Source: Mobula hypostoma (Eukaryota). From it: 64,000 bases of DNA. The notes below the pieces were generated by a model. The model was given only the letters and a program-made list of their open reading frames with translations. It was not told the origin of the DNA and made no database searches. The stretch is from the NCBI RefSeq assembly GCF_963921235.1, contig NC_086125.1:29636001-29700000 (forward strand), written 5' to 3'. Below are positions 26,193 to 35,199 of the stretch, piece by piece (the first letter of the stretch is position 1; each line of letters begins with the position of its first letter). A program made the position numbers and the translations under genes.

Positions 26193-27137
26193 CTGTGGGT
26201 TTCAACAATAAAAATTACATTTAGGGAGCCATGGATCCTCAGTACCGTGACCACTGCGCCCAAGGTTCAAACACACAAAGCACATGGGCTGGGCAACGTA
26301 ACGATTATCTGAAATTTCTCAAGAATAAGATGTATTAGATTGATTGCGAGGATGTGGCAGGTGCACATGTGGCCACTTGATAGCGCGGTGAATCAGTTGG
26401 ATCTCCTGCGTACGCAGGGCTCTTTGGCACGGGCTTTGCAGTGCCCATGTTTTCAACACAGCCGGCCTGATTTGTTGTTCGCACACTAAAGTTGCCCAGC
26501 GTGTACAGAGGTTAACACAACTCAGCAAAAACGCTTCATCCTACAGCTCAGTTGTCATTATTGCTCCACGCGTACGTAACACCCGCCCTCCCGGTACCCT
26601 GAGGATAGTCTGACAAAGTGGAGTTAGTTTCTGTTTGGCACAGGGAGCGACTGTGATCTGTCAGCAGGTGATGGAGAAAGATCTGACTGTAACTGTTAGA
26701 ACTGGATAGGTGTGTATCCAGTAACCAGAGGGTCGTAGGGCAAGAGCAGGAGGAGGGACAAGCTGGATCACTCTGACCAACTGCTAGTGCAGATACAAGA
26801 GGCCATATAGCTTCTTTCCACACTGTAGGATCCCATGGAGGTACAATTCTGCAATGAACTCGTCTATTGATCAAGGCCATGGTTTATCACAGAGTCATAG
26901 AGCACTAGAGCATAGAACAGTGTTATGGTCTAAACAGCGCTTCAGCCCATCTAGTCCATGCCTAGTCCCATCGACCTGAAACGGGACCACCCTCCATACT
27001 CCGCCCGTCCATGTACTTATTCAAGTTTCTCTTTCACGTTGCAATTGAACCACATCCACCAGTTCCGATGGCAGCTCTTTCCACGTTTGCCCCACCTCTG
27101 AGTGAAAAGGTTTCTCCTCGGGTTCTCCTTAAATAAA

Positions 27138-28462
27138 AACATAGAAACATAGAAAACCTACAGCACAATACAGGCCCTTCGGCCCACAATGCTGTGCCGA
27201 TCATGTACTTACTTTAGAAATTACCTAGGGTTGCCCATAGCCTTTATTTTCCTAAGCTCCATGTACCTGTTCAGGAGTCTCTTTAAAGACCCTATCGTAT
27301 CCGCCTCCAGCAGCCCATTCCACGCACTCACCACTCTGTGCAAAAAACTTACCCCTGACATCTCCTCTGTACCTACTTCCAAGCACCTTAAAACTGTGCC
27401 CTCTCATGTTAGCCATGGGAAAAAGCCTCTAACTATCCACGTGATCAATGCCTCTCATCATCTTATACACCTCTTTCAAGTCACCTCTCATCCTCCACTG
27501 TTCCAAGGAGAAAAGGCCGAGTTCACTCAATCTATTCTCATTAGGCATGCTCCCCAATCCACACAACATCCTTGTAAGTCTCCTCTGCACCCTTTCTACA
27601 ATTTCCACATCCTTCCTGTAGTGAGGTGACCAGAACTGAGCACAGTACTCCAAGTGGGGTCTGACCAGGCTCCTATATAGCTGTAACATTACCTCTTGGC
27701 TCTTAAACTCAATCCCATGTTTGAGGAAGACCAATGCACTGTATGTCTTCTTAACCACAGAGTCAACCTGCACAGCAGCTTTGAGTGTCCTATGGACTCG
27801 GACCCCAAGATCCCTCTGATCCTCCACACTGTCTTACCATTAATACTATATTCTGCCATCATATTTGACCTACCAAAATGAATCACCTCACACTTATCTG
27901 GATTGAACTCCATCTGCCACTTCTCAGCTCAGTTTTGCATCCTATCAATGTCCCACTGTAACCTCTGACAGCCCTCCACACTATCCACAACACCCCCAAC
28001 CTTTGTGTCATCAGAAAACTTACTAACCCATCCCTCCACTTCCTCATCCAGGTCATTTTTAAAAATCACGAAGGGTAAGGGTCCCAGAACAGATCCCTGA
28101 GGCACTCCACTGGTGACCGACCTTCATGCAGAATATGACCCGTCTACAACCACTCTTTGCCTTCTGTGGGCAAGCCAGTTCTGGATCCACAAATCAGGAT
28201 CCCCTTGGATCCCATGCCTCCTTACTTTCTCAATAAGCCTGGCATGGGGTACCTTATCAAATGCCTTGCTGAAATCCATATACGCTACATCTACAGCTTT
28301 ACCTTCATCAATGTGTTTAGTCACATCCTCAAAAAATTCAATCAGACTCGTAAGGCATAACTGCCTTTGACAAAGCCATGCTGACTGTTCCTAATCATAT
28401 TATGCCTCTCCGAATGTTCATAAATCCTGCCTCTCAGGATCTTTTCCATCAACTTACCAACC
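27138..28462 (-). mobile_element. CR1-type LINE, 5'-truncated
   Basis: AVDVAYMDFSKAFDKVPH...; RPHLEYC; TTTCTATG tail. Confidence 0.9.
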
Positions 28463-29742: not shown

Positions 29743-29931
29743 ATGTTGAATGAAGTGTTACAGTACGGTGAAAGTGCAGTGCAGGTAAGTAGTAAGGTAT
29801 AAGGCCATAACAAGGTGGTTTGTGTGCCGATGCCCACTGTTCCCAAGTAAGCTCGGACAGCGACCATTACTGGACAGTGTGGTGTCTTGGTGAACACAAT
29901 GCTCTCCACAGAGAGACCCCAGTTACTACAC

Positions 29932-30020
29932 CTGATACGTATCCAATGGCAGTGGAAACTGTCGGTAAGCTCAGATCGGGAAGAATTCTTTCAGGTGGAG
30001 TGAATTTAGTTAACCGGAAC
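29932..30020 (-). CDS. Uncharacterised gene, exon 2 (FRLTKFTPPERILPDLSLPTVSTAIGYVS)
   Basis: Acceptor ttttctgtcttgcag, donor CAG|GTGTAG; 89 nt, phase 2 to 1, fits both neighbours. Confidence 0.7.
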
Positions 30021-32867: not shown

Positions 32868-33018
32868 TACACATACTTCGATAGTAAATTTATTTTTATC
32901 CCCTTTGTTCCTTTAAACCCAACTGCTAACTACTCTAGTGGGATTTGACATGGGACTCTAGATTATTAGATTAGGATACTGGATTACAAGATCAGGAACA
33001 ACCAATATTTTCTCTTAC

Positions 33019-33278
33019 CCTTCTGCCTGCTGCTGGACCTGACGGAAGAGGCTCGGATATGGATTTTGTGGCAGTTCTGTCCTCAGCAGCCTGGCATACA
33101 GGTCCTCTAGAAGTCCCTGAAGTCCAGTTGCATCCAAGTATTTCCACAGCAGGTTTAACCTTCGTGCTACGCTCGGGTTGCTAGATTGTGGAACCGTGAG
33201 CCTCTCAAAAATCTGGCCAGACATCTCCTTACTCTCAGCAATGCCTTTCATTCTCTGCAATTCACAGGGTCCAGTCAT
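33019..33278 (-). CDS. Uncharacterised minus-strand gene, coding exon 1 (ATG; D/D-like motif KYLDATGLQGLLEDLYARLLRTELPQNPYPSLF)
   Basis: Acceptor tttctccacag ends at 33299, with an in-frame TAA before the ATG at 33278. Donor GG|GTAAGA, phase 2. Matches ORF 33015..33278. Confidence 0.8.
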
Positions 33279-35199
33279 TGAAAATAATACTTAGTGACCT
33301 GTGGAGAAACAGTTTGTGCTTCAGATCAGGGGTTGAGGATGGTTCTATCTCCACAAACACTGAACATTTGTAGCATTTTCTGGTTTTCACTTCGGCATCT
33401 GCAGTATTTTGTATTCCTCCTGTGCCGTAGCCAGCAATACCTCAGGCTTAACTCAGTAAGGAATATCACTGGGGAAGGCAAAGAGGATCCTGTTCAGACA
33501 AATGGAACACTAGAAACAGGGGAACTGAAAGCAGAAATCGATGGGAATGTTCAGCAGGTCAAGTAGTATCTGCGGAGGGAGGATCAGTTAGTGTCTGAGG
33601 TCAGAGGACAGAAGTGTAGTTTAATGTTATGTGGGCAGTCCTGGAAACGAAGTTACAGAGAAACATCAGACAGAGGCAAAATACTCAGATGAGTCATTTC
33701 TTGTTTTGCTCGCTGAAATCTCCAGAGAAGTTGGTAAGGTATATTTCATGTACCACAGTGGCGGAAATCACTGCTTTCCTTCTCTTTGTGACACAGAATA
33801 TGTCCATTCAGCCCATCAGAACCATGTAGGCTCACGACAGAGGAATTACTTACTCTCCTCACTCTATTTTCTGTATCCCTGTAGTTCTGCCCCCCCCACA
33901 CACAAACACACACACAAATATCAATGCTTCTTTGATTCTTTTGCTGCTATGGAGATTAATTCACAGCAGCCAATTAACCTGCCAGTGCAGCTTTGGGATG
34001 GGGAGGTAACTGGAGCACTCGAGGGAAACCAGAACACCCAGGGAAGGCAGAGCACCTAAAAGTCTGAGAGCATGTACCAATAAACTCAGCTTCTAGCCTG
34101 CTGTTATATAACTATTGAATAGTTCTCCAGCATGATAAAATGGACTCTTAATCTCACAGTCGTTATGACTTTGCACCTTAGTGTCTACCTGAACTTTCTC
34201 TATAACTGTAACACTGTATTGGTTTCCATTGTATTACTTCAATGCACTGTTGTAATGAATTGATTTGTGTGAATAGAATGCAATTTTCTCAGTATATATG
34301 ACAATTAAAATTCAAATAGTATTTCCACGCCATTAGGTACAGTTTCAATCCCACAGGATAGCTAACAATTCATGAAAGATAAAAATAGAAAAAAAACTAC
34401 CGCTTTATTTCTCTTGTTTATTTCTCAGAAACATTAGAGAGTCCAGCTCAGAGTAAGAAAGCCAGAATCTCTGGGTGATTTCCAAGAGGTAAAATGGAAT
34501 TGGGTCCTGGAGGAGTAATGGATGGTACCACTAGGTGGTGCTGCCTCCACAGTCTGACTGGCGCTCCAGCACTGATAACCCTTCCCCCTCCAGCACTGAT
34601 AACCCTTCACCCACCCTGGGCTTGCACTGAGAAACTGAGATCAGACTCTGTCTGGAAAGCACCACAGGAAGTCATCACTAAATATAAAACTTTTCACAGC
34701 TGTATAATAGCAAGGGATACTTCAGAATCAATATCAGGTTCATTATCGTCTGCATATGTTGTGAATATATTTTTGTTTTTGTACAGTGCAATATATAAAA
34801 TATACTATAATTTACAGTAAGAAATATATTAAAAAAGAAGCAGTGCAAAAATAAAATACAGCGAGGCAGTGTTTCGTGGGTTCATGGACGTGGAGAAATC
34901 TGGAGGCGAAGAAGCTGTTCCTAAAACGTTGCGTGTGTGTCTTCAGGCTCCAGTAGGTCCGCCCCTGTGGTAGTATAATGAGAAGGCTTGTCCCGGATGG
35001 TGAGGGCTCTTTATGATGGATGCCAGCTTTCTGAGGCACCGTCGTTTAAAAAATGTCAATTGAGTCATTCGTTTAAAAAATAATGAGTTGTGCTTCAAGT
35101 GTGATACCACCCAGTTTAGTCACTGGAACATCTTTCTGTGTCAAGGGCAGAAATTGTTGATGGCCACACTGAAGCAGAAGAGACAAAAAAATGTTTGAA

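What the first reader, a model, noticed from the sequence alone, without database searches (positions are those of the whole stretch)
33040..33165. RIIa/Dpy-30-like dimerisation-docking motif at the N-terminus of the unknown protein
Seen: LLWKYLDATGLQGLLEDLYARLLRTELPQNPYPSLFRQV. Established: the pattern YL-x4-L-x2-LL..L..LL..P.(N/D)P..(L/F) is characteristic of D/D domains (PKA RIIa, Dpy-30, ropporin/SPA17), which are common in AKAP-binding and axonemal or radial-spoke proteins. Inference: a scaffold with a docking domain. Exon 12 ends in ...DAALIK, which could lead into a second such motif outside the window.
Basis: inference. Interest (0 to 1): 0.7.

Follow-up and report, generated by a model that had tools for sequence, protein, structure and literature searches.

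The report
Conserved helix-loop-helix module, D/D-like, unproven
The peptide is real: it is the first of two copies of a conserved helix-loop-helix module that heads each half of an uncharacterised, transcribed two-unit nucleotidyltransferase-fold protein of a ray. It looks like a PKA/Dpy-30 docking domain in pattern only, and every profile test for that family failed.

Summary
The peptide is real. It lies on the minus strand at 33036-33152, in the first coding exon (33298-33019) of a 12+-exon gene. RNA-type contigs splice this exon to exon 2.

Orthologues are all unnamed proteins from sharks, rays, sturgeon, paddlefish, a newt and a chiton. Each carries the motif twice (Y-x22/23-P-x-N-P-Y-P).

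The duplication covers the whole ~430-residue unit (hhalign E 1.3e-15). Each unit is a helix-loop-helix module, a linker, and a Mg662/L544-like nucleotidyltransferase fold (Z 15.4).

The D/D reading is not supported as family membership:
- Pfam RIIa and Dpy-30 find nothing at E<=10, while DPY30, RI-alpha and RII-alpha controls score 1e-17 to 1e-21.
- A PDB profile search finds no D/D chain.
- hhalign probabilities are 0.6-3 %.

What remains is a likeness in design: a flanking aromatic helix, helix I, a PxxP loop and helix II. The module is also absent from bacterial and viral relatives of the core.

The complex test gave no verdict. My best guess (0.4) is a pairing or docking module that is analogous to a D/D domain. 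A cap on its own unit is nearly as likely.

Verdict: partly supported, moderate interest.

The parts
33019..33298 (-). First coding exon. It holds the acceptor boundary at 33298, an in-frame TAA at 33293-33291, candidate starts ATG 33278, 33251 and 33224, and ends ...GAA GG before gt at 33018-33017.
   Evidence: Spliced contigs X1 record 1 (0 differences) and X2 record 8 map 33298..33017 directly onto 30018... The exon-2 acceptor side was read and the exon-1 sequence.
33036..33152 (-).
   Evidence: Translation. Helices at 17-32, 35-46 and 56-73 in the AF2 model of the 92 %-identical orthologue.
33054..33071 (-). The P-Q-N-P-Y-P loop (residues 52-57), the core of the motif.
   Evidence: P, N, P and Y are invariant in 16 copies from 8 species. 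They are also invariant when both halves of all orthologues are aligned.
29929..30020 (-). Exon 2. It completes helix II (G)FRLTKF and carries the conserved linker ERILPDLSLPTVSTAIGYVSG.
   Evidence: tblastn with P0020 and the acceptor sequence. Contig X2 record 8 splices at 30018 and 29929.
26044..26196 (-). Exon 3 (approximate bounds).
   Evidence: tblastn with P0020 and P0002.
25207..25401 (-). Exon 4 (approximate), the start of the NTase-like alpha/beta domain (VQVISALTGPGIFTGTFYDLPPAVDVLL).
   Evidence: tblastn and the AF2 model.
23926..23976 (-). Exon 5 (approximate).
   Evidence: tblastn.
21961..22143 (-). Exon 6 (approximate).
   Evidence: tblastn.
20682..20837 (-). Exon 7 (approximate).
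   Evidence: tblastn, 98 % identity to P0020.
18722..19012 (-). Exon 8 (approximate), the start of the helical domain of unit 1.
   Evidence: tblastn.
15140..15253 (-). Exon 9 (approximate).
   Evidence: tblastn.
10643..10840 (-). Exon 10 (approximate).
   Evidence: tblastn.
6046..6183 (-). Exon 11 (approximate).
   Evidence: tblastn.
675..800 (-). Exon 12 (approximate). It ends ...GQEEQDAALIK before a gt. In the orthologues the second motif copy begins with the next residue, so it lies left of the window.
   Evidence: tblastn and motif positions in the orthologues.

Best explanation
Shown:
- The stretch encodes the first of two copies of a ~57-residue helical module: a flanking helix with W27/Y29, helix I, a P-x-N-P-Y-P loop and helix II.
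- The module heads each half of an internally duplicated, transcribed, ~1050-residue protein.
- Each module is tied by a ~40-residue low-confidence linker to a Mg662/L544-like nucleotidyltransferase-fold unit, made of an alpha/beta domain plus a helical domain.

Inferred:
- The module is an add-on protein-protein pairing or docking element. It is built like a D/D domain of the Dpy-30 / RI-alpha (PxxP-loop) type.
- Most simply, copy 1 pairs with copy 2, holding the two units as a pseudo-dimer, or the module pairs between molecules.
- It is not a detectable member of the RIIa/Dpy-30 families. The likeness may be analogy or homology too remote to measure.
For: - Gene, exon and transcription.
- Two copies in every orthologue, aligned without gaps with invariant Y, P, N, P, Y.
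- Whole-unit duplication: hhalign probability 98.6 %, E 1.3e-15 over 367 columns.
- AF2 unit model (pLDDT 71.5, pTM 0.69): helices at 17-32, 35-46 and 56-73 at pLDDT ~60-70, residues 69-104 under 50, core at 80-94.
- The core, without the module, matches Mg662 from model residue 116 (Z 15.4, 283 residues, rmsd 3.9). It matches viral L544-like NTases from residue 88-111 and bacterial ~440-residue proteins from residue 71-94. So the module is an addition to a fold that stands without it.
- Design likeness to the R1D2/Dpy-30 class, described as an aromatic or hydrophobic flanking helix plus a PxxP loop (PMC8339350): W-K-Y-L and P-x-N-P are present in both copies.
- The best hhalign local matches to DPY30, RI-alpha and RII-alpha all fall in the expected register. 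They exceed 91-97 % of shuffles.
- Known Dpy-30-motif proteins are often enzymes with such a module attached, such as NME5 and AK7.
Against: - No Pfam RIIa or Dpy-30 hit at E<=10 for any copy, while the controls pass.
- No D/D chain in the PDB profile search.
- hhalign probabilities are at most 3 %.
- The spacing from the conserved Tyr to the PxxP loop is 2-3 residues longer than in DPY30 or RI-alpha.
- Pairing is untested: the complex job gave no verdict.
- Foldseek alignments to the brachiopod-type orthologue and two other eukaryotic models start at query residues 8-13, so the module may sit at a fixed place on the core.
- The Leu-rich helix also draws spurious multi-repeat LRR and TPR hits, which shows how easily such patterns resemble each other.
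- A close relative's transcripts carry P55L in the 'invariant' loop, and the window has Tyr at the otherwise invariant Cys43.
Confidence: 0.4

Rival explanations
1. Intramolecular cap: each helical hairpin is a structural arm that packs back onto its own nucleotidyltransferase-like unit, for example against the helical domain or over the cleft. It has no role in dimerisation or docking, and the likeness to D/D domains is accidental.
For: - The hairpin was duplicated together with the whole unit and kept at the head of both halves.
- Foldseek alignments to the tandem orthologue and to two other eukaryotic models run from query residues 8-13 to the end of the unit.
- AF2 gives the helices a moderate pLDDT, not a disordered one.
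- All D/D profile tests are negative.
Against: - The core fold exists without the hairpin in viral and bacterial relatives.
- The hairpin's pLDDT (58-71) is well below the core's (80-94), although it holds the most invariant residues.
- A ~35-residue segment under pLDDT 50 separates it from the core.
Confidence: 0.33
2. One reading: a true, very divergent member of the RIIa/Dpy-30 clan that forms an X-type four-helix-bundle homodimer and binds amphipathic helices of AKAP-type or radial-spoke anchors. That would place the protein in cilia or flagella.
For: - Pattern likeness: YLD.T..., a P-x-N-P loop as in DPY30's PPNP, and the helix-loop-helix prediction.
- Local hhalign matches fall in register.
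- Enzyme-plus-D/D architectures are typical of axonemal proteins (NME5, AK7, RSP2, RSP23; PMC8339350).
Against: - True members recognise each other by plain phmmer or Pfam: DPY30 finds NME5, AK7, DYDC1/2, SDC1, RSP2 and even RII-alpha, and cross-hits appear. This motif hits none at E<=10.
- The helix I/loop spacing is longer than in known members.
- There are two copies in one chain, which no described D/D protein is known to me to have.
- I have no data on tissue or cilia.
Confidence: 0.12
3. The helices are only context. The conserved L-P-x-N-P-Y-P turn is a short recognition motif or a rigid turn read by an unknown partner, or needed for folding of the linker.
For: The invariant residues cluster in the loop (P52, N54, P55, Y56, mostly P57), while the helices vary much more between copy 1 and copy 2 (24-29 % identity).
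Against: - The hydrophobic periodicity of both flanking helices and the invariant Tyr 23 residues upstream are also kept.
- P55 is Leu in a close relative's transcripts.
- I could name no known motif class that fits PxNPYP.
Confidence: 0.15

Closest known systems
Dpy-30 motif (Pfam PF05186; human DPY30 residues ~45-99, PDB 3G36/4RIQ)
   Same: Both have a flanking helix beginning Y-L-D-x-T, a Leu-rich helix I, a P-x-N-P loop (PPNP in DPY30, PQNP here) and an amphipathic helix II. In both, the module is attached to the end of a larger, enzyme-like protein, as in NME5 and AK7.
   Different: - No profile match; hhalign probability 1.3 %.
- 2-3 extra residues lie between the Tyr and the loop.
- The invariant Y-P after N-P is not a Dpy-30 feature.
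- The module occurs twice in one chain.
- Dimerisation has not been shown.
RI-alpha-type (R1D2) D/D domains of the PKA-R superfamily (Pfam PF02197; PDB 2EZW/3IM3)
   Same: The hallmarks named in PMC8339350, an N-terminal flanking helix with aromatic or hydrophobic residues and a PxxP loop between helices I and II, are both present as patterns. The best local alignment is YVQKHNIQALLKDSIVQLC to YLDATGLQGLLEDLYARLL, at 32 % identity.
   Different: The hhalign probability is 0.6 % and there is no Pfam RIIa hit. Nothing corresponds to the conserved F..EYF of helix II. No AKAP-binding evidence exists.
Megavirus chilensis Mg662 / Mimivirus L544-like nucleotidyltransferases (PDB 4XUL, 4AMS)
   Same: The body of each half (unit residues ~116-568) has the same alpha/beta plus helical-domain fold: Z 15.4, 283 residues, rmsd 3.9; Foldseek probability 1.0.
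   Different: - These proteins lack the N-terminal hairpin.
- There is no sequence-level link.
- No canonical G[GS]...[DE]x[DE] signature appears in any orthologue, so catalysis is doubtful.
- The ray protein has two units in tandem.
OAS2/OAS3 (tandem nucleotidyltransferase-fold units in one chain; from general knowledge)
   Same: Both arise from internal duplication of a whole NTase-fold unit, with degenerate catalytic motifs in at least some units.
   Different: This is a different NTase subfamily, and no hairpin module heads the OAS units. The comparison is an analogy from memory and was not tested here.

Membership tests
Dpy-30 motif family (PF05186) | Recognition by the family profile | tested here: not met
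   There is no hit at E<=10 for the window exon, for both copies of P0020, or for all 16 copies of A2. The DPY30 control scores 2.8e-21. hhalign of A2 against DPY30 gives probability 1.3 %.
RIIa family / PKA-R D/D superfamily (PF02197) | Recognition by the family profile | tested here: not met
   No hit at E<=10. The RI-alpha and RII-alpha controls score 2.3e-17 and 1.2e-18, and DPY30 cross-hits RIIa at 7.6e-4. hhalign probabilities are 0.6 % and 3.1 %. The PDB profile search finds no D/D chain.
D/D domains (RIIa clan) | Helix I - short loop - helix II of about 40-50 residues, with a flanking N-terminal element | tested here: met
   The AF2 model of the orthologue has helices at 17-32, 35-46 and 56-73, with the loop at 47-55 (pLDDT ~60-70). 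The second copy has helices at 635-664 and 673-689 in the low-confidence full-length model.
R1D2 / Dpy-30 subclass | PxxP motif in the inter-helix loop and an aromatic or hydrophobic flanking helix (PMC8339350) | tested here: met
   P52-x-N-P55 is invariant in 16 copies, and W27-K-Y29-L30 (Y invariant) lies upstream. The criterion is quoted. This is a pattern only. The spacing is 2-3 residues longer than in DPY30 and RI-alpha.
D/D domains (RIIa clan) | Antiparallel X-type four-helix-bundle dimer | tested here: inconclusive
   The only complex job (copy 1 with copy 2) gave no verdict: score 0.01, with both chains under pLDDT 50. The homodimer was not run because the cap is one job.
D/D domains (RIIa clan) | Binding of an amphipathic helix (AKAP, RSP3, ASH2L-type) | not testable with these tools
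   This needs peptide-binding assays or a confident multimer model with a candidate helix.
Nucleotidyltransferase fold, Mg662/L544-like (body of the protein) | Alpha/beta NTase domain plus helical domain that superposes on a solved member | tested here: met
   4xul_A: Z 15.4, 283 residues aligned, rmsd 3.9, model residues 116-568. Foldseek probability 1.0. AFDB 'L544-like nucleotidyltransferase' at E 7.8e-5.
Nucleotidyltransferase fold (active enzymes) | hG[GS]x9-13[DE]h[DE]h signature | tested here: not met
   No such pattern occurs inside the alpha/beta domains of any of 7 orthologues. The second strand reads V-D-V/I-L in the N-half and E-L-T-E-F in the C-half. This was a regex and alignment check only, with no structural superposition of active sites.

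The most novel reading that the evidence does not exclude
The two hairpins form a new, undescribed branch of D/D-like modules that pair with each other in cis. They would clamp two Mg662/L544-like nucleotidyltransferase-fold units into a pseudo-dimer. The protein would then be an ancient animal NTase-type sensor or enzyme, kept in cartilaginous fishes, chondrosteans, salamanders, molluscs and brachiopods, and not found here in amniotes or teleosts.
Probability: 0.15. Interest if true: 0.7.

Novelty: new variant of a known kind. Interest (0 to 1): 0.45.

Why it matters
The finding points to an unnamed, Pfam-less animal protein family. Its members are ~1000-1250 residues long and contain two tandem giant-virus-like nucleotidyltransferase-fold units, each headed by an invariant P-x-N-P-Y-P helical hairpin.

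If the hairpins are pairing modules, this would be the first D/D-like element used in cis between duplicated enzyme-like units. It would also widen the sequence space of D/D domains beyond what the Pfam profiles catch.

If they are only structural arms, the finding still defines a new conserved domain boundary and gives a clean construct design for structural work.

Either way, the strict claim of 'RIIa/Dpy-30 domain, AKAP/axoneme scaffold' should not be put into annotation on present evidence.

Tried and rejected
- The search for homologous proteins with the exon product found no candidate, because of the length window. A profile search with A3 added nothing new.
- ESM-Atlas feature searches returned only unrelated clusters below the useful score.
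- phmmer of the exon against the PDB gave HDAC4 at E 1.2, and the A2 profile gave MTA1 at E 0.33. Both are chance-level.
- The LRR_6, TPR and CHAT proteins among the representative hits (P0003, P0008, P0014 and others) are multi-repeat proteins whose many weak stretches add up. Pfam finds no LRR or TPR in the hairpin, so I rejected them as relatives.
- Candidate exon fragments scanned in Pfam gave nothing.
- The full-length AF2 model was too poor to use for the hairpins (pLDDT 47.6).
- The complex-prediction job with copy 1 and copy 2 returned 'no answer' (score 0.01). This is evidence neither for nor against pairing.
- A profile search of the PDB with the whole unit found no sequence link to Mg662. 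AFDB Swiss-Prot gave no clear match.
- A literature search for Mg662 returned only unrelated accession numbers.
- I considered a helix-hairpin-helix motif, as in Pol beta-family enzymes, and dropped it because there is no G-h-G hairpin.
- I looked for MOZART1 synteny with the ENA orthologue and did not find it in the window.

Full report
**Observation.** The minus strand of 33015-33278 is an 87-codon ORF. The stated span 33040-33165 is slightly shifted and out of frame if read literally.

On the minus strand an acceptor-like AG precedes 33298. An in-frame TAA (33293-33291) lies upstream of the first ATG (33278). The exon ends ...GCA GAA GG before gtaaga.

Contigs of public runs from two studies carry 33298..33019 joined directly to 30020..29929 with no intron. 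One has 0 differences and the other has 6 (acceptor sequence). The exon is therefore real, transcribed and spliced, and it holds the N-terminus. Most orthologues start at the third ATG (33224, MSGQ). The stingray isoform P0020 uses 33278.

**The gene.** An exhaustive phmmer search with the exon product found unnamed proteins of little skate, a smooth-hound shark, two sturgeons and a newt. A word-indexed search with the shark protein added bamboo shark, sawfish, Atlantic stingray, paddlefish and a chiton. None has any Pfam domain.

tblastn with these proteins lays 12 coding exons on the minus strand from 33224 down to 675. They are about 90 % identical to the Hypanus sabinus protein P0020. Exon 12 ends ...DAALIK.

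**The motif occurs twice, and the whole unit is duplicated.** Every orthologue has two NPY sites. The second is embedded in ...DAALIK|YCVDCRLDWHWEQCLQAIFSELPLPPNPYPIVASEF.... Sixteen copies from eight species align over 55 residues without internal gaps, with Y, P, N, P and Y invariant.

Profile-profile comparison of the N-terminal halves with the C-terminal halves gives probability 98.6 %, E 1.3e-15, over 367 columns. The duplication therefore covers a ~430-residue unit, and the motif is the first element of that unit.

**Fold.**
- The full-length AF2 model was poor (pLDDT 47.6).
- Unit 1 of P0020 was modelled with an alignment of both halves of all orthologues. This gave pLDDT 71.5 and pTM 0.69.
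- In that model, helices lie at 17-32, 35-46 and 56-73 (pLDDT ~60-70), with the loop T-E-L-P-Q-N-P at 47-55.
- Residues 69-104 are under pLDDT 50. The alpha/beta domain spans 120-320 (80-93) and the helical domain spans 376-572 (80-94).
- The body matches the Megavirus nucleotidyltransferase Mg662: VIA Z 15.4, 283 residues, rmsd 3.9, model residues 116-568; Foldseek probability 1.0.
- Other Pol-beta-type NTases follow in the list: TENT5B, CCA-adding-like enzymes, Pol mu/TdT, CdnE, MB21D2 and MiD51.
- In AFDB clusters the best hit is a 1252-residue tandem orthologue (E 2.7e-26). 'L544-like nucleotidyltransferase' models also match.
- Bacterial ~440-residue hypothetical proteins share the core from residue 71-94 onward.

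Viral and bacterial relatives thus lack the hairpin. No canonical G[GS]...[DE]x[DE] signature is present in either half of any orthologue, so enzymatic activity is doubtful.

- Pfam-A contains both the RIIa and the Dpy-30 model. It returns nothing at E<=10 for the window exon, for the two copies of P0020, or for any of the 16 copies.
- In the same call the D/D segments of DPY30, RI-alpha and RII-alpha score 2.8e-21, 2.3e-17 and 1.2e-18 and cross-hit each other's model.
- DPY30's segment alone finds NME5, AK7, DYDC1/2, SDC1, RSP2, RSP23 and even RII-alpha in the PDB.
- The motif profile finds no D/D chain.
- hhalign of the motif profile against the three archetypes gives probabilities of 1.3, 0.6 and 3.1 %.
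- The local matches do fall in the expected register: loop on loop, helix I on helix I. They beat 91-97 % of composition-matched shuffles. That is suggestive at most.
- The same Leu-rich helix also pulled in LRR and TPR repeat proteins, which shows how cheaply such patterns match.

**What remains of the likeness.** The hallmarks given for the R1D2/Dpy-30 class in PMC8339350 are a flanking helix with aromatic or hydrophobic residues and a PxxP loop between helices I and II. Both are present as patterns in both copies, and the predicted secondary structure fits. The Tyr-to-loop spacing is 2-3 residues longer than in DPY30 or RI-alpha.

Dimerisation is therefore untested.

**Mechanism.**
- Shown: a conserved helical module that was added to a fold which stands alone in viruses and bacteria. 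It is tethered by a low-confidence linker, placed with less confidence than the core despite holding the most invariant residues, and duplicated with its unit.
- Inferred (0.4): it is a pairing or docking module, analogous to a D/D domain. Most simply the two copies pair in cis, as the fused descendants of an ancestral homodimer.
- Nearly as likely (0.33): each hairpin is an arm packed on its own unit.
- The strict reading, a true RIIa-clan member binding AKAP-type helices in cilia, gets 0.12.
- A loop-centred recognition motif gets 0.15.

**Caveats on conservation.** The window has Tyr where all other orthologues have Cys43. Transcripts of a closely related organism carry M1T, G37R and P55L in this exon. 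Motif 1 may therefore be under somewhat relaxed constraint in this ray lineage.

**Novelty.** The family is unnamed everywhere and has no Pfam model. The tandem Mg662/L544-like architecture with a PxNPYP hairpin at the head of each unit has not been described, as far as my searches went. As a D/D domain it is unproven. Overall this is moderately interesting, mainly as a pointer to an uncharacterised ancient animal gene family.

Noticed in passing
whole gene, window 675-33298 (-), and orthologues P0020, P0018, P0017, P0002, P0021, P0007, P0022: The protein is an internal tandem duplication of a ~430-residue unit (hhalign E 1.3e-15). Each unit has a Mg662/L544-like nucleotidyltransferase fold (Z 15.4 to 4xul_A). 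No Pfam model covers any part of it, and the canonical NTase catalytic signature is missing in both halves.
   Followed up: yes
window 33223, 33116, 33061/33060 (-): Transcript contigs of a closely related organism (runs X2 and X4) differ in exon 1 by M1T (which removes the ATG at 33224), G37R and P55L (inside the otherwise invariant N-P-Y), plus three silent changes. The window itself has Tyr at the otherwise invariant Cys43.
   Followed up: partly
window 29750-30018 (-): One spliced contig (X1 record 1) joins exon 1 to exon 2 but then runs on past the exon-2 donor (29929) into intron 2. This is a retained intron or an alternative 3' end. Reading through reaches a stop after ...GYVSGVVTGVSLWRALCSPRHHTVQ.
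   Followed up: no
window 12131-13108, 17393-18627, 27432-28390 (-) and others: The introns are full of CR1/L2-type reverse-transcriptase fragments, including a 326-codon open RT stretch at 12131-13108.
   Followed up: no
P0002 residues ~913-995: The C-terminus of the Mustelus gene model matches the RT C-terminal fragments scattered in this window (for example 12284-12454 and 17546-17668). It is probably a repeat-derived annotation artefact rather than part of the family.
   Followed up: partly
window 9889-10227: A run of 339 N lies in the intron between exons 10 and 11. I left it as it is.
   Followed up: no
L001/L002 10001-10240 (+): An ENA assembly (ERZ21736675) holds a further, compact orthologue. 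Its hairpin exon is P0012, followed by exons matching VWGL... and ...SGPGIFNDSFYDD..., and it lies about 2.5 kb downstream of a MOZART1 gene. No MOZART1 was found in the window.
   Followed up: partly
window 24606-24802: Another first-stage note (s1-144967) reports a hammerhead-carrying mini-element with a target-site duplication here. It lies inside the intron between exons 4 and 5 of this gene. I did not examine it.
   Followed up: no
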